Below are positions 17,076 through 50,274 of a DNA stretch of 64,000 bases, in pieces. The DNA is from Macrostomum lignano (taxonomy: Eukaryota), in contig NIVC01000731.1 in assembly GCA_002269645.1 (NCBI GenBank), forward strand, positions 62,001 through 126,000, written 5' to 3'. The notes beneath the pieces were generated by a model that worked only from the letters and a program-made list of their open reading frames with translations, ran no database searches and was not told where the DNA came from. Position 1 is the stretch's first letter. Every line of letters starts with the position of its first letter. A program made the translations under genes and the position numbers.

Positions 17076-17384
17076 TGGCGCTGGGGGTGCGTAACCGCGT
17101 GCTCCAGCTCCAAACTCGAACTGAGCCTGTGGTATCTGCCAGGTTCCACTGTTTGAGGCACTGTCTGCAGCTTTTGCAGGGGCTGTGGCCGCTCCTTTCT
17201 TACGTGTAATGTAAGCATATATCAAGTACGGAATCTCCCATCATACTCTCATGAAATTGCACAATAAAGTGTTGACCTACTCGGATATTTCACTTCTCCA
17301 AAATTGCACACTTTGTTCATACTACTGGACTCCTGGATCCAATTCGACAAAAATGCATTCAGCACACTGCTGCCGAACCATCCC

Positions 17385-23927: not shown

Positions 23928-24279
23928 CTCTTCCATCAGCCTCAGTCCGCACGGGACACGCGCGGACCAGTCACCCTCCACCAACTGGAATTCTTTAGCG
24001 ACGGAGGCAGCGGATCGCAGCAAAGACAGGGGGGGGGGGCTCCAACCCGGACAGCCCGTGTTTGCCAGCCACTAAGCCGCCCGCCACAAATCACTCAGTC
24101 ATCATCACTGGCGAGCCCGCAGCTCAATCTGTGCGCACCGGATGAGTGATGAAATAACAGATTCGGTTGGAAACCAACTCGGGCTCCGGAAGTGCTCAGG
24201 ATCGGGATGTTGGAGAGGAAGGCAAGCAGAGGTAGCGAGGAAATGGACACAGGCAGACAGACACAGACAGACAGACAGC

Positions 24280-24311
<32 letters not shown>

Positions 24312-24315
24312 GGAA

Positions 24316-24347
<32 letters not shown>

Positions 24348-24383
24348 GGAAAGACAGACAGACAGACAGACAGACAGACGGAA

Positions 24384-24459
<76 letters not shown>

Positions 24460-24471
24460 GGAAAGAAAGAA

Positions 24472-24508
<37 letters not shown>

Positions 24509-24543
24509 CACAGACAGACAGACAGACAGACGGAAAGAAAGAA

Positions 24544-24619
<76 letters not shown>

Positions 24620-24631
24620 GGAAAGAAAGAA

Positions 24632-24668
<37 letters not shown>

Positions 24669-24699
24669 CACAGACAGACAGACAGACGGAAAGAAAGAA

Positions 24700-24764
<65 letters not shown>

Positions 24765-24839
24765 GCCACACAGACAGACAGACAGACACACAGACAGACA
24801 GACAGACGGAAAGACAGACAGACAGACAGACAGACGGAA

Positions 24840-24919
<80 letters not shown>

Positions 24920-24931
24920 GGAAAGAAAGAA

Positions 24932-24980
<49 letters not shown>

Positions 24981-27900
24981 GGACAGCAGGCAGCTCAAAT
25001 CCCCCCCAAAACAGCGGTGTTCCGCCCAGCAGCTCAGGCCGGACAATGCCAGGCCTCAGAGTACACACAGGTGCAGCACAGACCCCCCGCTGATTCAGCC
25101 CGGACTGGGACAAGGTTGACGCCTGCAGGGAGGGGGGGACACGGGGAGAACTCAGCCGCAGCCAGAAACAATGCTTGGCTTTCTACCTTCCCCTAGTAGC
25201 AACTCAGCTCCCAGCGCCCTGGCAACAGCCAAGTGTCCGGCCCAGGCGACGGAAGCCGCTCAGCCAGTTAGAATTTCCAGTCAGGAAATGCACCTGGCTG
25301 GGAGCGCCACTGGCCGTGTGAAAGTTTGGGTCGCATGAAGGATTTGCAAAAAATGTTTCAATCTCTCAGGGCTGGCTGGAAACTCTCTAGAGGCTTTTTT
25401 AACTGACACTGCTGTCTGAGACACGGCCGCTGTTGTTCAGTGAGCTCCAACCCAGTCTGTGAGCCACTCTTCCATACAATGCACCTCTCTCATCTCCCGT
25501 CTCTCCCCCTCTTATCTACCGTTTCTTCCCCTCTCATCTACCATTTCTCCCCCTCTCATCTACCATTTCTCCCCCTCTCATCTACCATTTCTCCCCCTCT
25601 CATCTACCATTTCTCCCCCTCTCACCTACCATTTCTCCCCCTCTCATCTACCATTTCTCCCCCTCTTATCTCCCATTTCTCCCCCTCTCATCTCCCATCT
25701 CCCCCCTCTCATCTCCCATCTCTCCCCCTCTCCTCTCCCGTTTCTCCCCTCTCATCTACCATTTCTCCCCCTCTTATTTCCCATCTCCCCCCTCTCATCT
25801 CCCATCCCTCCCCCTCTCCTCTCCTGTTTCTCCCCCTCTCATCTACCATTTCTCCCCCTCTCATCTACCATTTCTCCCCCTCTTATCTCCCATTTCTCCC
25901 CCTCTCATCTCCCATCTCCCCCCTCTCATCTCCCATCTCTCCCCCTCTCATCTCCCGTTTCTCCCCCTCTCATCTACCATTTCTCCCCCTCTTATCTCCC
26001 ATCTCCCCCCTCTCATCTCCCATCCCTCCCCCTCTCCTCTCCTGTTTCTCCCCCTCTCATCTACCATTTCTCCCCCTCTCATCTACCATTTCTCCCCCTC
26101 TCATCTACCATTTCTCCCCCTCTTATCTCCCATCTCCCCCCTCTTATCTCCCATCTCCCCCTCTCATCTCCCATCTCTCCCCCTCTCCTCTCCCGTTTCT
26201 CCTCCTCTCATCTACCATTTCTCCCCCTCTCATCTACCATTTCTCCCCCTCTTATCTCCCATTTCTCCCCCTCTCCTCTACCATTTCTCCCCCTCTCCTC
26301 TCCCGTTTCTCCCCCTCTCATCTACCATTTCTCCCCCTCTTATCTCCCATCTCCCCCCTCTCATCTCCCATCTCTCCCCCTCTCCTCTCCCGTTTCTCCC
26401 CCTCTTATCTCCCATTTCTCCCCCTCTCATCTCCCATCTCTCCCCCTCTCATCTCCCATCTCTCCTCTCTCATCTCCCACCTATCTCCTCTCATCTCCCA
26501 TCTTTTCTCTCTCATCCCTATCTCTTTTCTTATCTCTCATCTCTCTTATTCCCATCTCCTATCTATCCCCTCTTATCTCATCCCTTTCCTCTCACCTCCC
26601 ATCGGCCACCCACCCGAGCCGGCAGAGTCCAGGTCAATATTAGAGTAGTAGGCCGCTGGCTCCTGCAGGATGCGGTCCACCTCCTCCCGCCTGTAGTTGC
26701 GGGAGGGCAGCGGGGGCGGCTGACCTCCCCCAGCGCCTCCGCTGCTGGCCGACTGCTCGGCCGGGGCAGCCGTGGCGGCCGCAGCTGCGGCATCGGAGGA
26801 GGCGGAGTCCGCGGTGTTGTTCAAGGAGCTCGGCAGCGTCTTGCAGATGCTGGCGTAGACATGCTGCTGCTGCTGCGGAGGCTCCACGGCGTGCCGCCGG
26901 CGGGCAACCGGCGTCGGCGTGGCTGTCGCCGGCTCGTCCTGACCGGCGCCGCTGTGCCGCCGGATAGCGGAGTAGAGCGGGTCGATCTCGCTGGTGAGGT
27001 CGCTGTCGATGGTGTACACCGAGGCGGCCGCGGGCAGCCGGGGCGAGGCGTTGGCTCGGGGAGCCGGCGCTGGTGCCGCCGTTGCTGCGGGCAGGGTATT
27101 CCGCGGGTTCCCGGGGGTCGCGGCGGCTGCGGCAGCCGAGGAGGCGGGGCGGCCGAAGCCGAGCCGGTGGGCGATGCCGGGCAGCGGGAAGTCCTGCAGG
27201 TGCCGCTTCAGCAGGCTGCGGCCCGTGGCGGCCTCCGGCGGCTGCGGCGGCGGCGGCGGCAGGGGCGGCTGCTGCTGGGGCACCGGTGGCAGCTCGCGGT
27301 CCGCCGGCTGGCTGCGGATGGACAACTGCGACTCCAGCCTGGCGGACGGGAAGGGGGCACATGAGAGTTGTGTGAGAGTTGTGTGAGAGTTGTGTGAGAG
27401 TTGTGTGAGAGTTGTGTGAGAGTTGTGTGAGAGTGGCGGTGAGAGTTGTGTGAGAGTTGTGTGAGAGTTGTGTGAGAGTTGTGAGAGAGTTGTGTGAGAG
27501 TTGTGTGAGAGTTGTGTGAGAGTTGTGTGAGAGTTGTGTGAGAGTGGCGGTGAGAGTTGTGTGAGAGTTGTGTGAGAGTGGCGGTGAGAGTTGTGTGAGA
27601 GTGGCGGTGAGAGTTGTGTGAGAGTGGCGGTGAGAGTTGTGTGAGAGTTGTGTGAGAGTTGTGTGAGAGTTGTGTGAGAGTTGTGTGAGAGTTGTGTGAG
27701 AGTTGTGTGAGAGTTGTGAGAGAGTTGTGTGAGAGTTGTGTGAGAGTTGTGTGAGAGTTGTGTGAGAGTTGTGTGAGAGTTGTGTGAGAGTTGTGAGAGA
27801 GTTGTGTGAGAGTTGTGAGAGAGTGGTGTGAGAGTTGTGAGAGAGTTGTGTGAGAGTGGCGGTGAGAGTTGTGTGAGAGTGGCGGTGAGAGTTGTGTGAG

Positions 27901-30900
27901 AGTTGTGTGAGAGTTGTGTGAGAGTGGCGGTGAGAGTTGTGTGAGAGTGGCGGTGAGAGTTGTGTGAGAGTTGTGTGAGAGTGGCGGTGAGAGTTGTGTG
28001 AGAGTGGCGGTGAGAGTTGTGTGAGAGTTGTGTGAGAGTGGCGGTGAGAGTTGTGTGAGAGCTGTGTGAGAGTGGCGGTGAGAGTTGTGTGAGAGCTGTG
28101 TGAGAGTGGCGGTGAGAGTTGTGTGAGAGTGGCGGTGAGAGTTTTGTGAGAGTTGTGTGAGAGTGGCGGTGAGGGTTGTGTGACAGTGGCGGTGAGAGTT
28201 GTGAGAGTTGTGTGAGAGTTGTGTGAGAGTTGCGTGAGAGTTGTGTGAGAGTTGTGTGAGAGTAGCGGTGAGAGTTGTGTGAGAGTTGCGTGAGAGTTGT
28301 GTGAGAGTTGTGTGAGAGTAGCGGTGAGAGTTGTGTGAGAGTTGTGTGAGAGTGGCGGTGAGAGTTGTGTGAGAGTGGCGGTGAGAGTTGTGTGAGAGTG
28401 GCGGTGAGAGTTGTGTGAGAGTGGCGGTGAGAGTTGTGTGAGAGTGGCGGTGAGAGTTGTGTGAGAATGGCGGTGAGAGTTGTGTGAGAATGGCGGTGAG
28501 AGTTGTGTGAGAGTTGCGTGAGAGTTGTGTGAGAGTTGTGTGAGAGTAGCGGTGAGAGTGGCGGTGAGAGTTGTGTGAGAGTGGCGGTGAGAGTTGTGTG
28601 AGAATGGCGGTGAGAGTTGTGTGAGAGTGGCGGTGAGAGTTGTGTGAGAGTGGCGGTGAGAGTTGTGTGAGAGTGGCGGTGAGAGTTGTGTGAGAGTTGT
28701 GTGAGAGTTGTGTGAGAGTGGCGGTGAGAGTTGTGTGAGAGTGGCGGTGAGAGTTGTGTGAGAGTTGTGTGAGAGTTGTGTGAGAGTGGCGGTGAGAGTT
28801 GTGTGAGAGTGGCGGTGAGAGTTGTGTGAGAGTTGTGTGAGAGTGGCGGTGAGAGTTGTGTGAGAGCTGTGTGAGAGTGGCGGTGAGAGTTGTGTGAGAG
28901 TGGCGGTGAGAGTTTTGTGAGAGTTGTGAGAGTGGCGGTGAGGGTTGTGTGACAGTGGCGGTGAGAGTTGTGAGAGTTGTGTGAGAGTTGTGTGAGAGTT
29001 GCGTGAGAGTTGTGTGAGAGTTGTGTGAGAGTAGCGGTGAGAGTTGTGTGAGAGTTGCGTGAGAGTTGTGTGAGAGTTGTGTGAGAGTGGCGGTGAGAGT
29101 TGTGTGAGAGTTGTGTGAGAGTGGCGGTGAGAGTTGTGTGAGAGCTGTGTGAGAGTGGCGGTGAGAGTTGTGTGAGAGTGGCGGTGAGAGTTTTGTGAGA
29201 GTTGTGAGAGTGGCGGTGAGGGTTGTGAGAGTTGTGTGAGAGTTGTGAGAGTGGCGGTGAGAGTTGTGAGAGTTGTGTGAGAGTTGTGTGAGAGTTGCGT
29301 GAGAGTTGTGTGAGAGTTGTGTGAGAGTAGCGGTGAGAGTTGTGTGAGAGTTGCGTGAGAGTTGTGTGAGAGTTGTGTGAGAGTAGCGGTGAGAGTGGCG
29401 GTGAGAGTTGTGTGAGAGTGGCGGTGAGAGTTGTGTGAGAGTGGCGGTGAGAGTTGTGTGAGAGTGGCGGTGAGAGTTGTGTGAGAGTGGCGGTGAGAGT
29501 TGTGTGAGAATGGCGGTGAGAGTTGTGTGAGAATGGCGGTGAGAGTTGTGTGAGAGTTGCGTGAGAGTTGTGTGAGAGTTGTGTGAGAGTAGCGGTGAGA
29601 GTGGCGGTGAGAGTTGTGTGAGAGTTGCGTGAGAGTTGTGTGAGAGTTGTGTGAGAGTGGCGGTGAGAGTTGTGTGAGAGTTGTGTGAGAGTGGCGGTGA
29701 GAGTTGTGTGAGAGCTGTGTGAGAGTGGCGGTGAGAGTTGTGTGAGAGTGGCGGTGAGAGTTTTGTGAGAGTTGTGAGAGTGGCGGTGAGGGTTGTGAGA
29801 GTTGTGTGAGAGTTGTGAGAGTGGCGGTGAGAGTTGTGAGAGTTGTGTGAGAGTTGTGTGAGAGTTGCGTGAGAGTTGTGTGAGAGTTGTGTGAGAGTAG
29901 CGGTGAGAGTTGTGTGAGAGTTGCGTGAGAGTTGTGTGAGAGTTGTGTGAGAGTAGCGGTGAGAGTGGCGGTGAGAGTTGTGTGAGAGTGGCGGTGAGAG
30001 TTGTGTGAGAGTGGCGGTGAGAGTTGTGTGAGAGTGGCGGTGAGAGTTGTGTGAGAGTGGCGGTGAGAGTTGTGTGAGAATGGCGGTGAGAGTTGTGTGA
30101 GAATGGCGGTGAGAGTTGTGTGAGAGTTGCGTGAGAGTTGTGTGAGAGTTGTGTGAGAGTAGCGGTGAGAGTGGCGGTGAGAGTTGTGTGAGAGTGGCGG
30201 TGAGAGTTGTGTGAGAATGGCGGTGAGAGTGGCGGTGAGAGTTTTGTGAGAGTTGTGAGAGTGGCGGTGAGAGTTGTGTGAGAGTGGCGGTGAGAGTTGT
30301 GTGAGAGTAGCGGTGAGAGTTGTGTGAGAGTGGCGGTGAGAGTTGTGTGAGAATGGCGGTGAGAGTTGTGTGAGAATGGCGGTGAGAGTTGTGTGAGAAT
30401 GGCGGTGAGAGTTGTGTGAGAGTTGCGTGAGAGTTGTGTGAGAGTTGTGTGAGAGTAGCGGTGAGAGTGGCGGTGAGAGTTGTGTGAGAGTGGCGGTGAG
30501 AGTTGTGTGAGAATGGCGGTGAGAGTGGCGGTGAGAGTTTTGTGAGAGTTGTGAGAGTGGCGGTGAGAGTTGTGTGAGAGTAGCGGTGAGAGTTGTGTGA
30601 GAGTGGCGGTGAGAGTTGTGTGAGAATGGCGGTGAGAGTTGTGTGAGAATGGCGGTGAGAGTTTTGTGAGAGTTGTGTGAGAGTTGTGTGAGAGTTGCGT
30701 GAGAGTTGTGTGAGAGTTGTGTGAGAGTAGCGGTGAGAGTTGTGTGAGAGTTGTGTGAGAGTGGCGGTGAGGGTTGTGTGACAGTGGCGGTGAGAGTTGT
30801 GAGAGTTGTGTGAGAGTTGTGTGAGAGTTGCGTGAGAGTTGTGTGAGAGTTGTGTGAGAGTAGCGGTGAGAGTTGTGTGAGAGTTGCGTGAGAGTTGTGT

Positions 30901-33260
30901 GAGAGTTGTGTGAGAGTAGCGGTGAGAGTTGTGTGAGAGTTGTGTGAGAGTAGCGGTGAGAGTGGCGGTGAGAGTTGTGTGAGAGTTGTGTGAGAGTAGC
31001 GGTGAGAGTGGCGGTGAGAGTTGTGTGAGAGTTGTGTGAGAGTAGCGGTGAGAGTGGCGGTGAGAGTTGTGTGAGAATGGCGGTGAGAGTTGTGTGAGAG
31101 TTGCGGTGAGAGTTGTGTGAGAGTGGCGGTGAGAGTTGTGTGAGAGTGGCGGTGAGAGTTGTGTGAGAGCCCGGCAACTGGGGATCTGGGACGGCGTTCA
31201 CCTTGGCCGCCGCTGAGCAGCCGTCGGCTTCTTTGTCGCTGAAGTTGCCGCCTGAGCTCCGGGCAGATCGGAGCGGCGCAGGCGGGCCAGGAAGCTCGCG
31301 CGGAGGCCGCTGAGCCGACGGCCGATGGCGGACTGGCGAGGGTCCTGACGGACGGCTGTCGTTGCTGCCGCCGCTGCTTCGCCTGCGGAAGGCGCTGCGG
31401 ACTCGTAGATGTCCGAGCCGGCCGCGTCCCGGCTGCGGGGGTGGCGGAGGGCGGATCTGATGAACTCAGAGGCGGATTTGATGAGCACAGAGGGCGGATT
31501 TGATGAGCACAGGGGGCGGATTTGATGAGCACAGGGGGCGGATTTGATGAGCACAGGGGGCGGATTTGATGAGCACAGGGGGCGGATTTGATGAGCACAG
31601 AGGGCGGATTTGATGAGCACAGGGGGCGGATTCGATTAACACAGGGGGCGGATTTGATGAACACAGGGGGCGGATTTGATGAGCACAGGGGGCGGATTCG
31701 ATTAACACAGGGGGCGGATTTGATGAACACAGGGGGCGGATTTGATGAACACAGGGGCGGATTTAATTAGTATGGATGCATCTTACTACAGGTGGGAATT
31801 TAATCAATACTCCAAAGGCAGCCCCAGGCGGAAGTGAAGCCAGAATACCAATTGAAACTCTAAGAATCAGCGTGGACTCGATTGCCTGGCAGCTTGCCAA
31901 GTCCGAACTCGCCGCGCTCCCGGATGTCCCCCTTCTTGCAGCCTCTGCTTCCCAGGACTTGGCGAGAATCTATAATTAATTCCTGCAAAAACGCCAGTCC
32001 AGCAGCAGGTGCGTTGCCTCAGCCAGGCAGGCGGGACCCCGGCTGCCCCTCCCACCAGGTCAGGTGCAAAAAGTTGCAGTCTAAAAGTTGCAAAAAGGGC
32101 AGCCCTCAAAGACTGGGTGCCCCCTGCCAGGCCAATCAAGCTGGGGGGGGGGTCTTATCTGCCAATCTGACAGCCGGCCATCCCGGATTCTGGAGGAACA
32201 CGGCAAACCCGCGGACTGCAGGCTGGCATCATTTATTCTAAGGGGATTCCTAAACCCCCCCCCCCCCCAACAGTTGGGAACACGCGCAACAGACAGACTG
32301 GGCAGGGCTTATCAATTGTTTGCAAAACAGAGGGTGCTGGAGAGGCATCCGTTCTGACTTTGCCGACCTCCCAGCCAGCACGGATGGTTGAATTCTACTT
32401 AGTTTTATGAATTCCAAGAGTGACTCTCAGCTGCAGTGAAGAGTGACTCTCAGCTGCAGTAAAGAGTGACTCTCAGCTGCAGTGAAGAGTGACTCTCAGC
32501 TGCAGTGAAGAGTGACTCTCAGCTGCAGTAAAGAGTGACTCTCAGCTGCAGTGAAGAGTGACTCTCAGCTGCAGTGAAGAGTGACTCTCAGCTGCAGTGA
32601 AGAGTGACTCTCAGCTGCAGTGAAGAGTGACTCTCAGCTGCAGTAAGAGTGATTCTCAGCTGCAGTGAAGAGTGACTCTCAGCTGCAGTGAAAAGTGACT
32701 CTCAGCTGCAGTGAAGAGTGACTCTCAGCTGCAGTAAAGAGTGACTCTCAGCTGCAGTGAAGAGTGACTCTCAGCTGCAGTGAAGAGTGACTCTCAGCTG
32801 CAGTGAAGAGTGACTCTCAGCTGCAGTAAAGAGTGATTCTCAGCTGCAGTGAAGAGTGACTCTCAGCTGCAGTGAAAAGTGACTCTCAGCTGCAGTAAGA
32901 GTGACTCTCAGCTGCAGTATAGAGTGATTCTCACCTGTAGTAGGAATGATTTTCGTGATTGCCGCCCGACCTCCGCCAGTCCGCAGGAGGCAGTTTGCCA
33001 TTCTTGGCAAGGCCGCTGCTGTTGTTGTTGCCACTGCTGGCACAGCTGCTGCGGCCACCGCCGCCCCCGTCGCCGCCGCCTCGCCCAGCCCCAACCTCAG
33101 CCTCGGGGTCGGGCGCCTTGACCCTGCCATGCAGGAGGCCTTTGAACCTGACGCACAGACAGAGTCCCGTCATGATTGATAGGCAGCTCAGGGTGCAGGC
33201 AAGCAGCAGGACCGAGACGGCGGACTGCAACTCCGGGCTGGCAGCGCCCGTGCTGTCCAT
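19415..33260 (-). CDS. Single-pass, Tyr-motif-rich, disordered transmembrane adaptor-like protein, ~800 aa. Exons 33260-32935, 31456-31202, 27338-26596 (or -26614), 21895-21530, 21469-21447, 21077-20837, 19869-19415
   Basis: All junctions are GT-AG and phase-consistent. N-terminal TM ends in CLC followed by basic residues. Tail motifs include IYESA, LYSAI, VYASI, YYSNI, EYQRV, LYEDL, SYSDL, GYDRL. Extra cassette or 5' exons are possible. Confidence 0.75.
19921..20055 (+). repeat. Five 26-bp tandem units, each containing a Pol III B-box-like GTTCGAGTC
   Basis: GGTGAGCCGCAGTTCGAGTCCCGTGG x5. Confidence 0.9.
23085..23670. repeat. CTCAGTCTCCCTGTCTACCCCAC-type minisatellite
   Basis: Tandem units. 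Confidence 0.95.
24255..24980. repeat. (GACA)n microsatellite with periodic CGGAAAGA interruptions
   Basis: Direct reading. Confidence 0.97.
25490..26590. repeat. ~22-bp pyrimidine-rich minisatellite (CCTCTCATCTACCATTTCTCCC / CCTCTCATCTCCC)
   Basis: Tandem units abutting the donor at 26595. Confidence 0.95.
27360..31170. repeat. 3.8-kb intronic satellite of interleaved GAGAGTTGTGT and GAGAGTGGCGGT units
   Basis: Direct reading. The 1542-aa and 1696-aa ORFs are largely its translation. Confidence 0.98.
31455..31765. repeat. 22-bp minisatellite (GATTTGATGAGCACAGGGGGCG)
   Basis: Tandem units abutting the acceptor at 31457. Confidence 0.95.
32410..32934. repeat. 23-bp minisatellite (GAGTGACTCTCAGCTGCAGTGAA)
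   Basis: Tandem units abutting the donor at 32934. Confidence 0.95.
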
Positions 33261-38665: not shown

Positions 38666-38772
38666 CTGCTGCTGCTGTTGCTGCTACTGTTGCGGCTGTT
38701 GCTGCTGTTGCGGCTGTTGCTGCTGTTGTTGTTGTTGTTGTTGTTGTTTTGGTGGTACGCGCCCAGGCAGAG

Positions 38773-41700
38773 CTAAGGGCAGTGTCTGGCCAGCGCTATC
38801 AACCCGAGGGGGTCGGCGGAAATGCTGCTGATGTCTGTCGTGGGTCCTCCAAGAAGGCGGAGCCTGGTGCCGGCGAGAGCTGGGCAGTCAAGCCAGTGTT
38901 CCAGGTCATCGCAGGGATGGCCGCAGCGGTGACATGCTGGGTCGACGGCCGGGTCGACAATGCTGCGATACGCGTTGAAAAGAGTGCAGTGACCTGAGCG
39001 TAAGCGCGCAAGAAGCACCGCATCGGCACGGTTGGTGATGGAGTCCTCTTCCAATTGACGGTTGAGAAGCCGGTACGCGTGCCGGGTGCGCTCGTGGCGT
39101 ATCGGGGGATCGAGGACGGATCTTCTGATGACGTTTTTGGCGCTGTGGATGCTGATCTGACTAGCGGGAGACACGAGCGTGGTGGCCTCTTTGGCTGCTT
39201 GGTCGGCCAGCTCGTTGCCAGGAATATTCTGGTGGCCCGGAACCCACTGCCAGGTGATTTCGGCAGATGCAGTAGGTAGTGCAGATCTGATTCTGGGGTT
39301 GCCGCTGGCCAGAGCGCGGAGCATAGATTGGCTGTCTGAGCAGATGTTGGTAGCCGCGGTGAGAGCAGCTTGGTTGATCCAGCCGATGGCGAGAGAGGCG
39401 GCGCGAAGCTCCTCTTCGAACGAGGATGTGGAGGGCGCGCCGCGCTGTTGAAGAGTCGCCAGGATGATAGGGTGGGCTGGGTCACCGGTCGTGACGATGG
39501 CTGAGGCGCCGCCATTGGTCGTGCCGCCTGATGCCGAGCCGTCGCAGTAGATGGTGATCAGGCCTGGGAGGTGGCGGATAGTGTCGATGGCCGTGGCTGT
39601 GCGCGCGGGACCGGGTTCCGGCAACGCCATGTCGACACGCACGTCGGTAGAGAAAGGGTCCCAAGGCGGCGGACGAGCAGTGCAGATCATGGCGCGCGGC
39701 GTGACCGAGCTAGCAATGAGTGGCAGCAGGTCGGTGACGTGGTTCCGCCAACTGTTCCTGCGTAGCCTGTGCGCTGTGTTTCCAGTGGCGGCAATGCGGC
39801 ACGGGTGAGAATCCGGGAGGCGCTGAGCTCTTTCGAAGGCCGTCAGGCATATAACATTGCTACCAGTGCGGACGGAGCAGATGCCAGCTTCCAGCCTAAG
39901 GGCCTCAACCGGAGTCGTGCGGTGTTGTCCTGTGACAATACGAAGGGCTGCGTTCTGCGCTCTCTCCAGCTGTTGAAACGCGGATTCAGAGAGCCAAGGG
40001 TGCCAGGCCGGCGCAGCGAAGTTAATGATGCTAAGTTGCATGGCACGGTAAATGCGGAGCAGGAGTTTTTTGGACCATCCCCATTCCTTGGAGGCCAGGC
40101 AGGCGAGGAGACGGCATCGGGAAGTGGTCCGATTGCACACGTGCTCCAGATGACTGCGGAAACTCAGAGTGCGGTCCAGTGTGAGGCCCAGCAGCCGAGG
40201 CGTTGGATTGTGCCGCAGGTTCCGGCCTTCGATAGAGATAGCCGGGGACCAGGCGGCTTCGCTGGTGTCTGTGGAGAAAAAGGCGGCCTCGCTTTTGTCT
40301 GGGTTTAGGACCATTTTGTGCTCATTGCTCCAGCGGGCCACGTTGTCGAGTGCTCTTTGCACAGCGCGTTGAGCCTCGAGCTTGTTGCGGTGGCGGGCGC
40401 GGAGGGCGATGTCGTCGGCATACATGGAGATCTCTGCCGGCGGGTTGACCACGTCATTGACCGTGTCAATGAAAATAAGGAAGAGAAACGGAGCGATGAC
40501 CGATCCTTGCGGGAGGCCCTGGCGCATGATAACCGGTGAGCTGCGAGCACCGTGGAGTTGCACGCGGGCAATGCGATGGCGCAAAAAGGCCGCAGTCCAT
40601 TTGATAAAGACAAGAGGGACGCGTTTGCGTGCCATAACGGTGATGAGGCGCTCACGCCACACTTTGTCAAAGGCTTTACAAAAATCAAGCAGAGCAATGA
40701 TCGTGCGTTCAGATGGTTTGAGGTTCATCCCGTCGCTGATGTCTTGGGTGACTCTCAGGAGCTGATCCTCGCAGGAGTAGTTGGCCCGAAACCCCGCCTG
40801 GTTCGGGGAGATCCAGCCGTGGCGCTCAGCCAGGTGGTGCAATCTAGTGACCAGGATGCGCTCGAGCAGCTTGACAATACAGGATGTGAGGCTGATGGGG
40901 CGAAAGGCCGCGATGTCCCGAGCTGACTTTCCAGCCTTGAGCAGGGGAATAATAATCGCGGTGCGCCAGGATTGAGCGACGGCCGCGTGCTGGAAGGACC
41001 AGTTGAATAGACTAAGCAGCTCTGCGCGGGCGAGCGGGCCAAGGGCCTTAATGAACCGAGGCGTGACCTCGTCGGCGCCAGCAGCGCCGTTAGCACGCTG
41101 GTGTTGGATGGCGGAGTCCAGTTCCTGCTCGGTGATGGCGGCGTAACCGTCGTGGGTCGAACCTGGGAGCGGAAGGGGAAGCCGAAGGATGGCTTTGGCT
41201 TCTCGGATAGTAGCGCGATCCGAATGGGAAATGTGGTACCTGCTGACAGAGGCGTACTGCTTGGCAAAGGCGTTGGCTTTGTCTCTAGGGTCTGTTAACA
41301 CTGTTGCCGACCTGGAGGGCCTCATTAGGGCAGTTGGAGTCCGGAGTGCCGTTAAGGCTGCGGATGAACTTCCACGCCTTGTTCGAGTTGGGCTCTTTCT
41401 CAAGATCGGTTATCGTGTCACGCCAAGCAGCCTCTTTCGTTGCCCTGGCAATTTTGTGAACGTTGGCGCAGGCGCTGAGCCAATCTTCTCTATTCTCGCC
41501 AACGGAGCGCCTGAGGCGGTTACGGAGCTTAATCGCCGCTTTGAGTTCAGGGGTGAGCCAGGGACGCGGTCTGTGCGAGGTACGGACTTTGCCGATGCAA
41601 AGGTTTGCCGCTTGCATGACTATATCATTAAAGCGTTTGGCTCTGGCGTCAAAGGTAAGATGCTCTTTGTGAAGGGCTTTAAATTTGTCCTCGACGACCG

Positions 41701-43219
41701 TTTGGAAAGCATTCCAGTCGACCCCTTGTTTGCGCCATATGAGACGGCTTTGGGCCTTAGGCAAGGTCCTAACCTTGAGGTCAAGGCGTATCACAATCGG
41801 CGTGTGATCACTGCCGAGGTCATCGGAGACTTGCCAGGTGCATTTGCTAGCCAGCTTTGAGGAGGCGAAGGACACATCCGGTGAGCTTTCGCCACCTGTG
41901 GCTTTATTGACTCTGGTGGGCGAGCCGTCGTTAAGGATTTCCAGTTGCGTGTCGATGGACCAGTCCAGGAGCGTGGAGCCTCGTTCGTCCTGGGGCTGTA
42001 TAGGGTCCCAGGCCGGAGAGTGGCTGTTGAAGTCTCCTAGGATGATGCCCTGAGACGGAGTGCCCAGGTGATTCCAGTCCGGAAGCTGTCGATCCTCGAC
42101 GCAGGTGCGGACAGGTGGAGCATAGACGTTGGTGATGGTAATCCAGTTAGCGGTAGATATCTGGATGTCGACCGTCTGGATTTCCATGTCCGCTGTGGCC
42201 GTGGGTTGCGGGGACGAGCGGAAGGCCAGCTTGTCTCTGATGAGAAGCAGCAGACCTCCACCGCTGCCGTCGCCGCGGTCTTTGCGCACGGCGATGTACC
42301 CGTTGATCTTTGGCAGCTGCGTGCGGTTGGAGAGCTTCGTTTCTTGGACAGCTGCAATGTCGATATCGCTGTCGGAGAGGCGTTCGGCCAGCTCGGGCAG
42401 TTTGGAGGCGATTCCGTCGGCGTTCCACTGGAGAAGACGGAGGCTGTCGGCAAATTTAGTGTCGCGGGCGACCTTGTCCTGCAGGGGGACGCGCGACGTA
42501 GCTGCCGAAGGGGCGGGAGCTCCTTGGGTGCGCGCTGTGCAAACTGGGCAGTCCCAAGGGCTGCGAGCCGCGGCATCCGCGGCGTTGCGATTAAGGCCGG
42601 TGCAGCACTTGTGGTAAGCGGCGCTGCAGGAGTTGCACTTGACAAACGCGACGCCGCGGCGAATGGCGGTCGAGCATTTAGCACAGTAGCGGCGCTGGGC
42701 GTCGCTTGGATCGTTCAGATCTCTGTCGGTAGTGGGATCAGCTTGTCTGCGGGTAAGAGCAGGGCGGCGGAAGATGGAGTGTGCGCCTGGAAGTTGGACC
42801 GCCTGCTGCCGATGCAGAGGGCAGAGCCAGCTGGGGGCGCCACGATACCGCGAGATGTGGCTGCAGTTGCTGGAGCGGTGGCAGGCCAGAGCGCAACCTT
42901 TGGCAGCGCAAGTGAGCGGAGTAGTGCCAGTGCGGATGGGCCCTGAGCAGCTGTGACAGCGCGTTGGCTGAGACATGCGGGGCTCGGGTGCCGGGAGGTC
43001 ACGCAGGTGCGCAGCGGATGCCGAGTCCAATTCAAGGGGGCGGTGCACAGAGCAGCGCCACGGAGATCGGACAATCTCGGCGCGGTGCATACCGCTGCAT
43101 TTCTTCTGACAGTGACAGCGCTCGGAACATTCTGGGACCTCACATGGCAGGCTGTGCATGCCCGTGCGGATTGGGCCGTTGCATGAGTTGCAGGCTGGGC
43201 CGGGATTAGTTTCGATGTC
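38773..43219 (-). CDS. Retrotransposon polyprotein with one frameshift near 41300
   Basis: ORFs 41285..43159 and 38773..41403 join as ...LQVGN/(V)LTDPRDKANAF. The frame extends upstream of ATG 43159 through DIETNPGP. Confidence 0.88.
43196..43219 (-). other. 2A/StopGo motif DIETNPG|P, in frame with the polyprotein
   Basis: GAC ATC GAA ACT AAT CCC GGC CCA, preceded by the hydrophobic helix YLSRLVLFALALTTLAG. Matches D(V/I)ExNPGP. Confidence 0.9.
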
Positions 43220-43349
43220 CCCGGCGAGCGTAGTGAGGGCGAGCGCAAAGAGGACGAGGCGGGACAGATAGACAGCAGCAAAACAACCGGTCTCCCTGCC
43301 AGCCGTGCCGAAGGCACGCGAGGGCAGATGGGTTGAAGACCACGACTTA

Positions 43350-43422
43350 GGAGCTTTGGTGTTAAAACCGGGTCGCCGCGATGAGGCAGCTCCTTTGACC
43401 GCACCAGAAGGTGCACCAACCC
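43350..43422 (-). ncRNA. Candidate HDV-like self-cleaving ribozyme at the element 5' end
   Basis: P1 GGGUU/GACCC, J1/2 hairpin GCACC/GGUGC, P2 GGAGCU/AGCUCC, P3 GCC/GGC, L3 UCAUCGC, GG after P1, J4/2 CCAA. Manual fold only. Confidence 0.6.
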
Positions 43423-44375
43423 TATGGGGCTGATCGGGCTGCTGTTGCAGCAGCTGCTGCTGTTGTGGCTGTTGCTGCTTTTTTTCTTCTGTTTTTTTGC
43501 TTTAGCAGTTTTTCATGCTCTTTCTGCTTTTTGCTTTCTAGCGTTGTCGGCCAGTCTTTTTTTAAATCAATTGACTTAAGTCTAGAAAACAGGACTGGAG
43601 CCTTTCGAGGGCTCAAATTTAGCTCGACAGAATTTCTGCACTTAGGCATCTGAAATACATGATATACAGGCACCTTATCATGTTTTATATGGGAGAGAAG
43701 GGCTCAGGAGATGCTTACGATTGAGTGAATGCTTGCTATCAAAGAAAGCCCGATTTCAAGGGTGCTTGCTATTGGGAGGAAGCGCAGTGAATGCTTACTA
43801 TTAGGAGACGATTCCAATTATTGCTTCCTTATTGCATCTTTAAATTAAATTTAAGCATTCTAAGGGGGCAAATTTAGTGATGGTTCCAAGATTGTTAAGC
43901 TGACCTGCATTTTCTGTTCATAAATACGTACAGATACTAGTTTGCGAAAGAAAAGAGAGAAAATTAACACGCGCAACAAGACGTTAATCAATATCGGCTA
44001 ATATTGTTATATCAATCACTTCATGATATATTTCAATTCATTATGTCATAATTTTTAAAGTTCTGTATCTCTGTTGTCATAATATAATGCAAAAGCGAGG
44101 CAGAAACGGAATAAAAAAGGGAAAAAAGTACGAAGGACTACGGACGAGCAGTACGAAAGATTGGGGGGGGGCATGGTGAGCAAGAGCAATAGATGGCAAG
44201 GTGCGTAGAACAATGAATGGTAAAACAGATTGACAGAAATTAACATAGGGGTCGTGACGTCTTGGCCAGTGCACAATAGAATGCACTGTTCACTTTCACG
44301 CCGGCGATGAGGCGCATCACGTTTGTGAAAGAAAAATTAATGTGAGCTTTTGTACCCATCTTTCGGGTACATGGA

Positions 44376-44650
44376 TTGGTCAAAGCAATTCTGCACATTG
44401 ACGATCTAGTTAATAATTCCATAAATACATTTCAGGCATATGGATTGGTCAAAGCAATTCTGCACATTGACGATCCAGTTAATAACTCCATAAATACATT
44501 TCAGGCATATGGATTGGTCAAAGCAATTCTGCACATTGACAATCCGGTTAATAATTCCATAAATACATTTCAGGCATATGGATTGGTCAAAGCAATTCTG
44601 CACATTGATGATCCAGTTAATAACTCCATAAATACATTTCAGGCATATGT
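44376..44650. repeat. 66-bp tandem repeat, 4 copies
   Basis: (CATA)TGGATTGGTCAAAGCAATTCTGCACATTGACGATCCAGTTAATAACTCCATAAATACATTTCAGG. Confidence 0.95.
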
Positions 44651-48244: not shown

Positions 48245-50274
48245 TCACAAATGGCGACTGTTGTAACACCGCACAGGTGCCAGGAGCCTTTCAGCGAAGA
48301 GAGGATGCGTGCTCGCCACCTTGTATCTCTCCCAATGCAGGAGGAAGTCTCTGTGCATCGACTCCGTGCATTGTTCGCTCCATGGCCCCAGGCCTGTTTT
48401 GTCCTTGGCGCGGCAGAAGTCACCGACGTGGTGGAAAATCGCGTGGATTTTTGGACTGATGGAAATGCCGAGATCGGCATAACTAGTGCGAAATTCCTGA
48501 ATCGCCTGCTTGAAATTGGGACGCAGCTCACTCCCGAAGCATGACACCACGACCGAGTTCAACGCTCGAAGGGCGGCAACAAACGGCAGCGCTGCCATCG
48601 GGCACATCGCTTCTAGCAGGTCCACGTTGCGCAGCAACTTGCGGCTCGTATTGCCAGTGAAGCTGCCACCGTGATGCTTGTCACGTTGGACATTGCAAGC
48701 TGTAAGCCAAGCTTCGCTCTCGGGCCACACACCATGCAGACCCTCGTACAGTACATGGACCGCACCGGTCAGCAGGTGCAGCTCCGGCGGAGGGACAATG
48801 TGCAACACCGGGACTTCAACTCCAGCGGAAAAGATGCTGGGCTGGACGACGTTATCGAAGTGCTTAGCTAGTTGGCGTTCACCACCAGCAGCCAGGTAGG
48901 CCTGGTATTTCTCACTGAGGCTGCCAAAGGTCCTTGGCTCGCCACAGCTGTCAAGGCTCCCTTTATTGACGTTGCACCAGGTGCAGGGATGCGAGCTGCT
49001 GTGGGCCATCAAGCCGAGCAGGATGTTGGCAAGCTTCAGGTCGCACGCGATGCTGATGTTCGCCGACAGAAGCTGCAGGCGGCAGCTCTCCCAGAGACAC
49101 TCCAGGTTCCTGTGGTTCTCCTGCGTGTTGGGAGCGATGCCAAGGATGACGGCCCGATGCACGCCAGTGTCGAGGAATCGGCGATCAGCCCCCTTCTGCT
49201 GCTCCTCACCAGCACACACGCACAGGTCAAAAACGGATATCGAGAGCTTCAAGAACCCACCTCCACCATCGATTCCAATTCTGACGACTGTGGAAGCAAC
49301 ATCCATCAGCCGGCGGTTTGCAATCATGCGGCCCAGGAGCTCGACCACATCAGTGCAGACAACGGCCCACTGCTCAGCTGGAGTCTGCCTTCCCCTCTCT
49401 TCTCGGATAAACGCCAGCTGCTTCGCTTGGAAGAGGTCATCCAGTTCGTGATCCATCTCCCTCAATGTCTGCCGGATGTTGCTCTGGACAGCTGAGGCGC
49501 CAATCGAAGACCGAAGATTTCGAAGTACAACCTCCGTTTTGCGCGAACTGAGGCCCAGCTCACCTTGCAGATGACGCATATTATCCGCCGTGAAGACCGC
49601 TGTTGGCTTCGGAGGCGGCGGATTCACGGCCAGCCTCATTGAGGGTCCAGCGTTGGATGCCAGCACGGTGATGCCCGAGGCTGTGTCTCCGGAGCCTGAA
49701 GTAATAAGTTTCTGCCGCACAATTGTTGTGGCGAGCCGCTCTGGGAATTCCGGGGACGCTTCCTGCAACAGGGCATGCGCATTCTGCAGTCTTGTGGGTC
49801 TGTTGCATGTGTGCGGCTTGCCCCTGCCAATAGGACTGATGCAGAAGGAGCAGACCTTGACCATTTCGGGCTTGGGCGTTGTAGCCTCGTCCGCCGTCAA
49901 ACTCGGCCGCCCAACAGACCGCTTTGGGACGTTGGCTTCTGGAGGATGGACTCTGCATCTGGCAGTGCTGCAGATCTTACAGTCGCATCCATCTTGGCCC
50001 ACTGATCGGGTCACCGGCAGTGGCTGCACGTCCCTGAAGTCATACATCGGTGGCACATCAGCCCGTTGGCCCTTCTCCAGCTGCTGCAGAGCGAATCTGC
50101 ACGTGCCACAAATTGCCTTAGGAACGCGATTATCGTGCAGATCGTAGAGCCAGCCACTGTGCCGATTGATGATGGCCAGCATCCAGGGCGTAACGGATCG
50201 CTACGCTACTCTTTTGCCTTCGAAAAGCACAAAATGCAGATCCGATTGAGGCAATCTTCGTGTGACAGTGGCAT
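48245..50274 (-). CDS. Chapaev transposase; 645-aa ORF from 50182, with the N-terminal 22 codons (from ATG 50274) separated by a stop/frameshift
   Basis: H-x7-C-x2-C (HEDCLNRICILC) and D..P..IC..C zinc motifs. Putative catalytic D (IDGGGG), D (CDLK), E (ESMH). Also CTWC, PELH, H-x4-H, and C-terminal YNSRH. Confidence 0.85.

What the first reader, a model, noticed from the sequence alone, without database searches (positions are those of the whole stretch)
43196..43501. 2A/StopGo peptide in an AUG-less leader of the retrotransposon ORF
Seen: LAGDIETNPG|P is in frame with the polyprotein. The frame is open from 43501 through the putative ribozyme, but its first AUG (43159) lies after the 2A. 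A c(UUCG)g-capped hairpin (CUGCC...CGUGCC-UUCG-GCACG...GGCAG) sits between the ribozyme and the 2A. Established: L1Tc and several animal APE-type elements encode 2A-like peptides, and ribozyme-cleaved uncapped RNAs such as R2 are thought to initiate non-canonically. Inference: ribosomes initiate without AUG and the 2A gives the enzyme a defined N-terminus (PACNSC...) whatever the start site. The first Cys-rich finger begins upstream of AUG 43159, which argues that the upstream frame is translated.
Basis: partly seen in the sequence, partly recalled or inferred. Interest (0 to 1): 0.72.

Follow-up and report, generated by a model that had tools for sequence, protein, structure and literature searches.

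The report
StopGo peptide in a start-codon-less retrotransposon leader
A young, still-intact jumping gene of the flatworm Macrostomum lignano reads open from its very first base, has no AUG for 92 codons, and carries a textbook 2A "StopGo" peptide just before its first zinc finger. The peptide itself is an ordinary feature of such elements, but how translation starts here is an open and testable question.

Summary
GDIETNPG|P (43222-43196, minus strand) is in frame with a non-LTR retrotransposon ORF. About 1e-4 such motifs are expected per window.

The frame is open from 43501. The first in-frame ATG (43159) lies inside zinc finger 1.

The window comes from Macrostomum lignano. Three further copies are 99.6-99.9% identical, and all three have an intact 1555-codon ORF.

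At least 22 protein clusters and about 60 metagenomic loci carry the same 2A-finger-APE order. Only the last 30 residues before G|P are conserved. In-frame AUGs are neither conserved nor commoner than chance.

A two-tier leader hairpin (43328-43295) covaries in relatives. Its cap is a UUC triloop, not c(UUCG)g.

The HDV-like ribozyme is not established. Rfam finds nothing, and 14% of shuffles match my descriptor as well. Its cleavage site would lie 16 nt inside a 5' end shared by four insertions.

Best reading: the leader is translated and StopGo sheds it. The start mechanism is unresolved. Candidates are non-AUG initiation, an AUG donated by the flatworm spliced leader, or read-in through the in-frame (CAG)n target.

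2A in such elements is known. The AUG-less design is a new variant.

The parts
38751..43438 (-). Full-length non-LTR retrotransposon copy (4688 nt without tail). It is a single ORF open from nt 1, broken in this copy by a 2-nt deletion.
   Evidence: 99.6-99.9% identical to L004, L079 and L080 of M. lignano, with identical 5' and 3' ends and different flanks. APE, RT and RNase H are found by Pfam.
43439..43477 (-). (CAG/CAA)n tract abutting the 5' end. It reads poly-Q in the frame of the element ORF and is target-derived.
   Evidence: All four copies join (CAG)n|CCCGATCAG in the same phase, and the upstream flanks are otherwise unrelated.
43502..43504 (-). In-frame TAA in the flank that closes the frame 21 codons upstream of the element.
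43223..43438 (-). AUG-less leader: 72 codons from element nt 1 to the 2A core, with no ATG in any frame.
   Evidence: invariant in four copies
43400..43434 (-). Two adjacent 5'-terminal hairpins: AUCAGCCC-CAUA-GGGUUGGU and GCACC-UUCU-GGUGC.
   Evidence: -19.8 kcal/mol, z = -3.3, 88% of the ensemble
43349..43422 (-). Candidate HDV-like pseudoknot, not established. P1 GGGUU 43422-18 pairs with GACCC 43374-70. P2 AGGAGCU 43394-88 pairs with AGCUCCU 43355-49. P3 is GCC/GGC with L3 UCAUCGC (43387-43375). The candidate catalytic C is at 43359/43358.
   Evidence: Found by my descriptor scan, but 13.7% of dinucleotide shuffles score as well. No Rfam hit. Nested fold z = -0.7.
43295..43328 (-). Two-tier hairpin UCUGCC-CUCG-CGUGCC-UUC-GGCACG-GCU-GGCAGG, conserved in relatives.
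   Evidence: z = -2.4. The same architecture occurs in 8 of 68 leaders against 0.56 expected. In relatives, 6 of 10 pairs covary. A model built from relatives alone hits it at 12.6 bits, E = 0.002 within the leader but E = 0.56 in the whole window.
43325..43327 (-). In-frame CUG near-cognate codon at the 5' foot of the hairpin. A second in-frame near-cognate, ACG, sits in a GGCACGG context at 43306-43304.
   Evidence: its use as a start is inference only
43196..43285 (-). Family-conserved 30-residue StopGo peptide CFAAVYLSRLVLFALALTTLAGDIETNPG|P. The core is at 43222-43196.
   Evidence: Positional information content rises at -29 (V/F/L block; F at -28 is shared by the window) and is near maximal from -13 to 0.
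43043..43192 (-). Cys/His finger 1. It begins two residues after the StopGo proline.
   Evidence: the same junction occurs in relatives
43182..43184 (-). First ATG of the element in any frame. It is out of frame and opens a 14-codon ORF that overlaps ATG 43159.
43157..43159 (-). First in-frame ATG (codon 93 of the element), located inside finger 1.
42539..42958 (-). Cys/His fingers 2 and 3 (42958-42812 and 42685-42539).
   Evidence: only a weak RING-like Pfam hit
41795..42433 (-). AP endonuclease domain.
   Evidence: Pfam Exo_endo_phos and Exo_endo_phos_2
41302..41303 (-). Site of the 2-nt (AA) deletion that frameshifts this copy after ...ALQVGN.
   Evidence: Alignment of four copies
40249..40911 (-). 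Reverse transcriptase domain.
   Evidence: Pfam RVT_1
39184..39558 (-). RNase H domain.
   Evidence: Pfam RNase_H
38666..38750 (-). 3' tail AAAA(CAA)n(CAG)n.

Best explanation
This is the N-terminal StopGo (2A) module of a young, (CAG)n-targeting, single-ORF non-LTR retrotransposon of Macrostomum lignano. The domain order is 2A, three Cys/His fingers, APE, RT, RNase H.

The element has no start codon of its own. Its reading frame is open from its first nucleotide, and its first 72 codons double as a structured RNA made of 5' hairpins and a conserved two-tier hairpin.

Ribosomes that enter this frame at or upstream of about codon -30 make a heterogeneous, unconserved leader peptide. At GDIETNPG|P the nascent chain is released and translation continues from proline. 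The enzyme therefore always begins P-A-C-N-S-C, two residues before its first zinc finger, wherever translation started.

I commit to non-AUG initiation on the element's own leader as the single most likely entry route. That could be near-cognate or structure-assisted initiation, as is thought to happen for R2.

Shown here: the motif, the frame, the absence of AUG in four copies, conservation of the 30-residue peptide, and conservation of the hairpin.

Inferred: that the leader is translated, that skipping occurs, and where ribosomes start.
For: - The 2A core is perfect and is not a chance match (1e-4 expected).
- It sits exactly where at least 22 protein clusters and about 60 loci of relatives have theirs, directly before the first CxxC.
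- A 30-residue block before G|P is conserved. It includes F at -28, which the window shares. Upstream of it there is no peptide conservation.
- Finger 1 would lose its first CxxC if translation began at ATG 43159.
- Four copies differ at 20 of 4690 columns. Three have an intact 1555-codon ORF from nt 1. The leader is invariant, with the first M at codon 93.
- In three of the four copies the in-frame flank offers no ATG before a stop.
- In 45 relatives, stops per frame are 26/61/89 (ORF frame first). In-frame ATGs fit a Poisson model, with 12 of 45 loci having none. ATG positions are not conserved.
- L005 has an AUG where L007 has ACG, inside a helix, with a compensatory change on the partner strand. 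Both ORFs are intact.
- RNA-level selection acts in the leader: the hairpin covaries and relatives have a 5' pseudoknot.
- Precedent: R2 RNA is thought to start translation without a cap (PMC12203849).
- Odon et al. 2013 (PMC3708506) document the 2A-PHD-APE order and 2A activity in such elements.
Against: - No transcript, ribosome-profiling or protein data were available.
- The copies are so young that a recently lost AUG would not yet show as decay.
- An AUG-free 247-nt leader in all three frames is also what an ordinary scanned 5' UTR looks like. ATG 43159 has a purine at -3.
- No in-frame near-cognate codon is conserved among relatives.
- Relatives come from metagenomic contigs of unknown integrity. 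Prokaryote-style gene calls there invent M from TTG, as in P0016.
- Most retrotransposon-associated 2As tested elsewhere are only moderately active. Leu-rich ones often lower protein abundance instead of skipping cleanly (PMC13405545; bioRxiv 10.64898/2026.09.24.754024). The window peptide has 4 Leu at -19..-10.
Confidence: 0.42

Rival explanations
1. The start codon is donated by spliced-leader trans-splicing. The M. lignano spliced leader (SL) ends in ...UUGCAUG. Spliced onto any CAG| of the (CAG)n target, or onto GAUCAG|CCC at element nt 4-9, its AUG falls in frame with the ORF. The mRNA then has a cap and an AUG, and 2A removes the M-Q(n)-leader.
For: - The SL sequence ends in ATG, and about 30% of M. 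lignano genes are trans-spliced (PMC8629364).
- The flatworm SL AUG is used as an initiator in Schistosoma (PMC9851317, citing Cheng 2006).
- All four copies join (CAG)n|CCC in the Q phase, so every CAG| is an in-frame acceptor.
- The leader has no ATG in any frame for 247 nt, as needed if the SL AUG must come first.
- The ORF is open from nt 1.
Against: - The enriched acceptor motif [T/C]TNCAG (PMC8629364) is not met: there is no T at -5 and no pyrimidine tract.
- None of the four copies carries SL sequence at its 5' end.
- Relatives with AUG-less leaders abut (CAA)n, which has no AG, and show no consistent in-frame acceptor.
- No SL-read data could be checked.
Confidence: 0.2
2. Ordinary cap-dependent scanning. 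The 5' 280 nt is a UTR and translation starts at AUG 43159, after leaky scanning past the weak out-of-frame AUG 43184. The 2A and the first half-finger are an untranslated relic of an ancestor that had an upstream start.
For: - The leader is AUG-free in all frames, and AUG 43159 has G at -3.
- Copies are too young to show decay.
- The open frame alone is only P about 0.1.
- Annotators called the protein from this M (P0008, P0130).
Against: - The lineage is only 35-46% identical to its nearest relatives. It still keeps a perfect 8/8 core, the family-specific F at -28, the Leu-rich helix, the CxxC of finger 1 and 92 stop-free codons.
- M43159 is not conserved in relatives.
- A 14-codon out-of-frame ORF starting at 43184 overlaps AUG 43159.
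- A stable hairpin starts at nt 5 of the RNA, which is unfavourable for cap-dependent loading.
Confidence: 0.2
3. Translational hitch-hiking. The element has no promoter or start. It inserts after a whole CAG unit, so in a sense-oriented poly-Q exon it is automatically fused in frame to the host protein. The host AUG drives translation and 2A cuts the enzyme free.
For: - The junction phase (CAG)n|CCC is constant, and the ORF is open from nt 1.
- In L079 the in-frame upstream frame is open for 201 codons with an M, and GenBank annotates a fused partial protein, PAA57949.1.
- (CAG)n and (CAA)n are stop-free in all sense frames.
Against: - Only one of four copies has an upstream in-frame AUG.
- L004 sits in a (GCA)n Ala tract of another element, out of frame. 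The window and L004 have stops 21 and 9 codons upstream.
- Such insertions would destroy host genes.
Confidence: 0.1
4. An HDV-like ribozyme at 43422-43349 cleaves the co-transcript. The uncapped RNA then starts translation through the ribozyme fold without an AUG.
For: - A fold with contiguous P2-P3-L3(UCAUCGC)-P3'-P1' and a C in J4/2 can be drawn.
- Relatives have a covarying P1/P2 pseudoknot that begins at nt 1 of the element. Between P1' and P2' they carry AAC[GC]AA, which resembles the window's ACACCAA.
- R2 and L1Tc are precedents (PMC12203849, PMC4035085).
Against: - Rfam finds nothing in the window or in 20 relatives.
- P1 is only 5 bp, and 13.7% of shuffles do as well.
- The P1 strand is locked in a hairpin that makes up 88% of the ensemble.
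- The predicted cut is 16 nt inside a 5' end shared by four independent insertions, so cleaved RNA could not be the template.
- The relatives' fold lacks a canonical P3/L3 next to P1'.
Confidence: 0.12
5. The main role of the 2A is to throttle output rather than to define an N-terminus. It would lower the yield of the APE-RT protein, as a form of self-restraint by the element. This can coexist with the best explanation.
For: - This was proposed for L1Tc and other elements (PMC3708506, PMC3894237).
- In a high-throughput screen, 3 or more Leu at -19..-10 goes with reduced abundance, and 59% of ORF2p-associated 2As fell in that class (PMC13405545).
- The window peptide has 4 Leu in that stretch.
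Against: - It does not explain why the peptide upstream of the 2A is unconserved and lacks a start codon.
- It does not explain why the 2A always abuts the first finger.
Confidence: 0.3

Closest known systems
L1Tc / ingi elements of trypanosomes (Heras 2006; Sanchez-Luque 2011, 2014)
   Same: Single long ORF with APE, RT, RNase H and a C-terminal zinc motif. A 2A sits in the N-terminal region. The 5' RNA domain is structured (Pr77, an HDV-like ribozyme). There is no ORF1. (PMC3894237, PMC4035085)
   Different: Here three Cys/His fingers lie between the 2A and APE. The target is a (CAG)n microsatellite. No ribozyme could be shown, and no AUG precedes the 2A. Clade membership by RT phylogeny was not tested.
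2A-PHD-APE non-LTR elements of amphioxus and sea urchin (Crack-17_BF, CR1-1/17/26_BF, STR-24/25/34/35_SP; Odon et al. 2013, PMC3708506)
   Same: The order is the same: 2A, then a PHD-type finger, then APE, in the ORF2-like protein. Most are single-ORF elements. Their 2As were shown to be active in vitro.
   Different: Those authors attribute missing starts to 5' truncation. They propose down-regulation or separation of an ORF1-like function. Here full-length, intact, near-identical copies lack an AUG, and the upstream peptide is unconserved.
R2 elements (HDV-like ribozyme, cap-independent start)
   Same: No own promoter, co-transcription with the target, a structured 5' RNA, an ORF that runs into the 5' region, and non-canonical initiation (PMC12203849, PMC3774820).
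   Different: R2 has a restriction-like endonuclease, targets 28S rDNA and has no 2A. Its ribozyme is experimentally proven and cuts at or upstream of the 5' junction.
Flatworm ORFs started by the spliced leader's AUG (slORFs)
   Same: AUG-less ORFs that rely on the 3'-terminal AUG of the flatworm spliced leader (PMC9851317). The M. lignano SL ends in ATG (PMC8629364).
   Different: This is known for cellular genes, not for a retrotransposon. No SL junction has been shown here.
N-terminal 2A-like signal sequences (Roulston et al. 2016, PMC4981915)
   Same: A 2A lies at the extreme N-terminus, with a hydrophobic stretch before it. The protein proper begins at the proline.
   Different: Those occur in cellular NOD-like receptor genes with a normal AUG. 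Dual targeting was not assessed here.

Membership tests
2A / StopGo peptide (class A) | Core octapeptide D(V/I)ExNPG|P | tested here: met
   DIETNPGP at 43219-43196. I at the V/I position and T at x are tolerated in mutational scans (bioRxiv 10.64898/2026.09.24.754024).
2A / StopGo peptide (class A) | Lies inside a continuing ORF, with a functional protein encoded downstream | tested here: met
   An intact 1555-codon ORF runs through it in L004, L079 and L080.
2A / StopGo peptide (class A) | Hydrophobic, Leu-rich upstream context of about 10-14 residues that fills the exit tunnel | tested here: met
   LVLFALALTTLAG. In the family, positions -13..-9 are L/L/L/L/A. Compare the L-rich upstream motif groups in PMC12846837.
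2A / StopGo peptide (class A) | Enough translated sequence upstream (about 18-30 residues or more) | tested here: inconclusive
   72 stop-free codons precede the core, but no AUG does. Whether they are translated is inferred.
2A / StopGo peptide (class A) | Demonstrated peptide-bond skipping | not testable with these tools
   Needs a reporter assay.
2A-bearing APE-type non-LTR retrotransposons | APE and RT domains in one ORF | tested here: met
   Pfam Exo_endo_phos(_2), RVT_1 and RNase_H.
2A-bearing APE-type non-LTR retrotransposons | 2A in the N-terminal region, upstream of APE | tested here: met
   the same holds in relatives.
2A-bearing APE-type non-LTR retrotransposons | Clade assignment (Ingi, I, Nimb, CR1 and so on) by RT phylogeny | not tested
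   Only the domain order is known: APE-RT-RNase H plus a C-terminal Cys motif.
HDV-like self-cleaving ribozyme | Nested double pseudoknot: P1 of 6-7 bp, P2 of at least 5 bp, 3-bp P3 with a short L3 next to P1' | tested here: inconclusive
   A fold exists with a 5-bp P1 and a 7-bp P2, but 13.7% of shuffles match it. Criteria are from PMC3774820.
HDV-like self-cleaving ribozyme | Cleavage site at or upstream of the element's 5' end | tested here: not met
   The predicted site, 43423|43422, is 16 nt inside the 5' end shared by four insertions.
HDV-like self-cleaving ribozyme | Match to curated covariance models | tested here: not met
   No Rfam hit at E up to 10 in 43000-44000, nor in 20 relatives. 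These models are known to miss retrotransposon ribozymes.
HDV-like self-cleaving ribozyme | Self-cleavage that depends on the J4/2 cytosine | not testable with these tools
   The candidate C is at 43359/43358.
c(UUCG)g tetraloop hairpin | UUCG loop closed by a C-G pair on a continuous stem | tested here: not met
   The register gives a 6-bp stem with a UUC triloop. Relatives have C(UNC)G triloops.
SL trans-spliced flatworm mRNA | Acceptor of the type [T/C]TNCAG, with no upstream donor | tested here: inconclusive
   In-frame CAG| sites are present, but the T at -5 is absent (motif from PMC8629364).
SL trans-spliced flatworm mRNA | SL-containing reads at the junction | not testable with these tools
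   No read data were available.

The most novel reading that the evidence does not exclude
The element is built to have no start codon of its own. It integrates after a whole CAG unit of (CAG)n tracts, which keeps its frame continuous with whatever lies upstream. It then borrows cap and AUG from outside, either from the AUG-terminated flatworm spliced leader joined at an in-frame CAG| acceptor or from a host poly-Q exon. The 2A then cuts off the borrowed part. This would be a retrotransposon that couples target choice, mRNA capping, start-codon supply and N-terminus definition.
Probability: 0.28. Interest if true: 0.8.

Novelty: new variant of a known kind. Interest (0 to 1): 0.52.

Why it matters
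Why 2A peptides sit at the N-terminus of so many single-ORF non-LTR retrotransposons has been open since 2006. The published ideas are down-regulation of the downstream product, or separation of an ORF1-like function.

This case offers a clean system to test a third idea. It is a family with intact, near-identical copies in a transgenic-ready model flatworm. There is no AUG before the 2A. The leader peptide is unconserved, but the leader RNA is structured and under selection.

The third idea is that the 2A exists to discard whatever is translated before the enzyme, which frees the element from needing a defined start.

It would also bear on how promoter-less elements get translated at all. The options are non-AUG initiation, AUG donation by the spliced leader, or host read-in.

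It also warns annotators that first-ATG gene models truncate these proteins.

Tried and rejected
- **Rfam.** Gathering thresholds over the whole window, E up to 10 over 43000-44000, and E up to 5 over 20 related loci gave no ribozyme or other family.
- **HDV-like descriptor scan.** A permissive version gives many chance hits in every leader. A stricter version recovers the by-eye fold, but 13.7% of shuffles match it. A second hit uses the conserved hairpin as P4. I rejected it because no unpaired C is left in J4/2.
- **P1 from the true 5' end.** I looked for a P1 built from the real 5' terminus or from the (CAG)n flank, for example the GCUGCUG at 43277-43271. No adjacent P3/L3 exists.
- **Whole-leader folding.** It is not more stable than shuffles (z = -0.7).
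- **Exact-protein look-ups.** Look-ups of the window's own ORFs found nothing. The source was found through the RT search.
- **Near-cognate starts.** I looked for a conserved in-frame near-cognate codon next to the hairpin in relatives and found none.
- **Nucleotide relatives of the leader.** There are none outside M. lignano, so the window's own pseudoknot cannot be tested by covariation.
- **Finger assignment.** Pfam gives only a weak RING-like hit.
- **Whole-window hairpin model.** The window hairpin ranks third (E = 0.56), behind chance hits at 6975 and 39621. The model is small and not very specific.
- **Papers not available.** Supplementary tables of the 2A screens are not held. Ruminski 2011 and Heras 2006 are not held.
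Full report
**What is at the coordinates.** On the minus strand the frame of the large ORF reads ...SRAFGTAGRETGCFAAVYLSRLVLFALALTTLAGDIETNPGPACNSCNGPIRTGMHSLPCEV.... The 2A core GDIETNPGP occupies 43222-43196. The frame is closed by TAA at 43504-43502 and is open from 43501. The first in-frame ATG is at 43159. The only earlier ATG in any frame is at 43184, out of frame and downstream of the 2A. The motif D[VI]ExNPGP is expected 1e-4 times in the six-frame translation of this window and occurs once. The lack of an in-frame ATG (about 0.9 expected per frame) and the open frame (2.3 stops expected per frame) are each unremarkable alone. Their meaning comes from context.

**The element.** Pfam finds AP endonuclease, reverse transcriptase and RNase H along the same strand. 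They are split between two frames in this copy. An RT-based protein search gave a 100% match to a Macrostomum lignano protein (P0008), so the window is from this free-living flatworm. I retrieved three further genomic copies, L004, L079 and L080.

The four copies align over 4690 nt with only 20 variable columns. The other three have an intact 1555-codon ORF that is open from the first nucleotide of the element. The window copy has a 2-nt deletion near 41302.

All four share the same 5' end, CCCGATCAGCCCCATAGGG... (window 43438). All four share the same 3' end...ACCACCAAAA(CAA)n(CAG)n. Each lies in a different flank and always inside a (CAG)n tract. The junction is always (CAG)n|CCC, in the poly-Q phase of the ORF. 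So 43501-43439 is flank and target repeat, not leader. The true leader is 43438-43223.

The leader and 2A (nt 1-242) are invariant in the four copies, and the first M is codon 93 in all. In-frame flanks give no ATG before a stop in the window (21 codons), L004 (9 codons) or L080 (72 codons). Only L079 has an upstream in-frame M, and GenBank there annotates a fused, partial protein (P0128). So the idea that consensus copies have an upstream AUG is not borne out.

**Is the upstream frame translated?** Three lines of evidence say probably yes.
- M43159 lies inside finger 1. Finger 1 is CNSCNGPIRTG-M-HSLPC.... Its internal repeat, finger 2, reads CHSCSGPIRTG-T-TPLTC.... Starting at the M would remove the first CxxC.
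- The same junction, 2A followed within 1-10 residues by CxxC, occurs in relatives only 35-46% identical. It is in 22 of the 130 protein clusters retrieved, many of which are N-terminally truncated by gene callers. It is also in about 60 loci fetched from metagenomes.
- A positional profile of 61 non-redundant leaders shows conservation from -29 to 0. There is a V/F/L block at -29..-27, L-rich positions at -16..-10, and AGD[VI]ExNPGP. Upstream of -30 the profile is at noise level. The window shares the F at -28.

A lineage this diverged would not keep a perfect core, the F at -28 and the CxxC if they had long been untranslated. The caveat is that the extant copies are too young to exclude a recent loss of an AUG.

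**No conserved AUG in the family.** I looked at the 80 codons upstream of the conserved block in 45 leaders.
- In-frame stops are depleted: 26, against 61 and 89 in the other two frames.
- In-frame ATGs number 60, against 50 and 45 in the other frames and 41 expected.
- Twelve loci have no in-frame ATG, exactly the Poisson expectation.
- ATG positions are scattered.
- Fifteen loci have no M at least 17 residues upstream of NPGP between the 2A and a bounding stop.
- L005 has an in-frame AUG 10 nt from its 5' end. Its relative L007 has ACG at the same place, inside a helix, with a compensating change on the partner strand. Both ORFs are intact.

Caveats apply. These are metagenomic contigs. Some may be truncated or dead. 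Prokaryote-style gene calls turn TTG into M, as in P0016.

**RNA structure in the leader.** Its register gives a 6-bp inner stem with a UUC triloop and a 6-bp outer stem, not a c(UUCG)g cap.
- The same two-tier architecture with a C(NNC)G triloop occurs in 8 of 68 leaders, against 0.56 expected from shuffles.
- In relatives, 6 of 10 pairs show changes on both sides, and 95% of cells are paired, against 25-39% in slid controls.
- A covariance model built from relatives alone finds the window hairpin as the best hit in the leader (12.6 bits, E = 0.002). It ranks only third in the whole window (E = 0.56).
- The peptide encoded over the hairpin is not conserved, so selection there acts on the RNA.
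- The first 39 nt of the element fold into two hairpins (z = -3.3, 88% of the ensemble).
- Relatives L005, L007, L013, L030 and L028 have an interleaved P1/P2 pseudoknot with compensatory changes. It begins at nt 1 of the element, right after a (CAA)n flank.

**The ribozyme.** An HDV-like fold can be drawn at 43422-43349, with P1 GGGUU/GACCC, P2 AGGAGCU/AGCUCCU, P3 GCC/GGC and L3 UCAUCGC. The evidence against it is as follows.
- 13.7% of dinucleotide shuffles give as good a hit.
- Rfam is silent.
- The P1 strand is held in the stable 5' hairpin.
- The predicted cut lies 16 nt inside a 5' end that four independent insertions share. Cleaved RNA therefore could not be the transposition template.

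I treat the ribozyme as unproven, at about 0.12. The 5' domain of the relatives has HDV-like topology but no canonical P3/L3 next to P1'.

**How translation might start.** There are four options.
1. **Non-AUG initiation on the element's own RNA.** In-frame near-cognates exist: CUG at 43327 at the foot of the hairpin, and ACG at 43306 in a GGCACGG context. None is conserved in relatives. R2 is the precedent for cap-independent starts (PMC12203849).
2. **Spliced-leader donation.** The M. lignano SL is CGGTCTCTTACTGCGAAGACTCAATTTATTGCATG, about 30% of genes are trans-spliced, and the acceptor motif is [T/C]TNCAG (PMC8629364). The flatworm SL AUG is a proven initiator (PMC9851317). Every CAG| at the junction would be in frame. 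However, the T at -5 is missing, and no copy carries SL sequence.
3. **Read-in from a host ORF through the in-frame poly-Q repeat.** This is possible only for L079 among the four copies.
4. **Ordinary scanning to AUG 43159, with a relic 2A.**

I rank these 0.42, 0.20, 0.10 and 0.20.

**What the 2A does.** Published proposals are down-regulation of the downstream product, or release of an ORF1-like upstream function (PMC3708506, PMC3894237). The second does not fit, because the upstream peptide is unconserved and of low complexity. The first may well apply. The peptide has four Leu at -19..-10, a feature linked to reduced abundance in a 2026 screen (PMC13405545). Only 7% of 2As associated with reverse-transcribing elements were highly active in another screen (bioRxiv 10.64898/2026.09.24.754024).

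**Novelty.** 2A in APE-type non-LTR elements, including the 2A-PHD-APE order, is established. L1Tc combines a 2A with a 5' ribozyme. No paper in the searchable library links Macrostomum with 2A or non-LTR elements. The new points are a flatworm family with intact, AUG-less, near-identical copies, family-wide evidence that the leader is selected as RNA rather than as peptide, and the in-frame (CAG)n target. I rate it a new variant of a known kind, of moderate interest.

Noticed in passing
window 43477-43439 and 38750-38666; L004 2706-2721 and 7412-7446; L079, L080: The family inserts into (CAG)n tracts. The 5' junction is always (CAG)n|CCCGATC, and the 3' end is ACCACCAAAA(CAA)n(CAG)n. Relatives from metagenomes likewise abut (CAA)n or (ACA)n. 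It looks like a microsatellite-targeting non-LTR lineage.
   Followed up: partly
window 38662-38336 and 38335-38134 (minus strand): Directly downstream of the tail lies the 3' end of a different, 5'-truncated non-LTR element. It has a C-terminal zinc motif (Pfam zf-RVT, E = 3e-4) and its own (CAA/CAG)n tail. Elements therefore pile up tail to head. L005 also carries two tandem elements.
   Followed up: partly
window 41302-41303: This copy alone has a 2-nt (AA) deletion that splits the ORF into the 624-aa and 876-aa pieces. The other three copies are intact.
   Followed up: yes
L005 59-170, L007 178-288, L013 74-194, L028 329-436: Relatives have a 5'-terminal pseudoknot, with P1 at nt 1-5 and P2 at nt 9-15. 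Compensatory changes occur in four different sequences, and AAC[GC]AA is conserved before P2'. Between L005 and L007, AUG and ACG swap inside P2 with a compensating change. Whether this domain self-cleaves is unknown.
   Followed up: partly
leaders of L002, L005, L013, L014, L016, L017, L021, L022, L028, L038, L051: The 240 nt upstream of the conserved 2A block are free of stop codons in all three frames. The cause may be composition or some other constraint.
   Followed up: no
window 43285-43277 and homologous positions in relatives: The conserved V-F-L block at -29..-27 corresponds to a conserved nucleotide run, GUGUUUUUGG (GGUUGUUUUGCUG in the window). This is further from the peptidyl transferase centre than the residues resolved in the cryo-EM structure. 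Its role, as peptide or as RNA, is unexplained.
   Followed up: no
L079 2501-7444 (GenBank PAA57949.1): The deposited gene model fuses 92 codons of unrelated flank to the element ORF and marks it partial. The models for the other copies start at the internal M. First-ATG annotation truncates this family.
   Followed up: partly
window 48245-50182 (minus strand): A 645-aa ATG-initiated ORF has no confident Pfam family (zf-AD E = 0.03, DUF1280 E = 0.09). It may be a domesticated or transposon-derived gene.
   Followed up: partly
window 717-1622, 8923-9924, 15607-18309, 24095-31730, 44371-44649: The window holds many long minisatellite arrays with strong GC skew, including a run of more than 5 kb at 26.6-31.7 kb and a 69-bp repeat of 4 copies. 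They alternate with 26-30% GC blocks (4-6 kb, 34-38 kb, 58-60 kb).
   Followed up: no
window 6975-7006 (+) and 39647-39621 (-): The small hairpin model scores higher here (17.5 and 16.0 bits) than on the leader hairpin. The first site lies in an unrelated GC-rich ORF and the second inside the element's own RT-RNase H region. I took both as chance hits that show the model's low specificity.
   Followed up: partly
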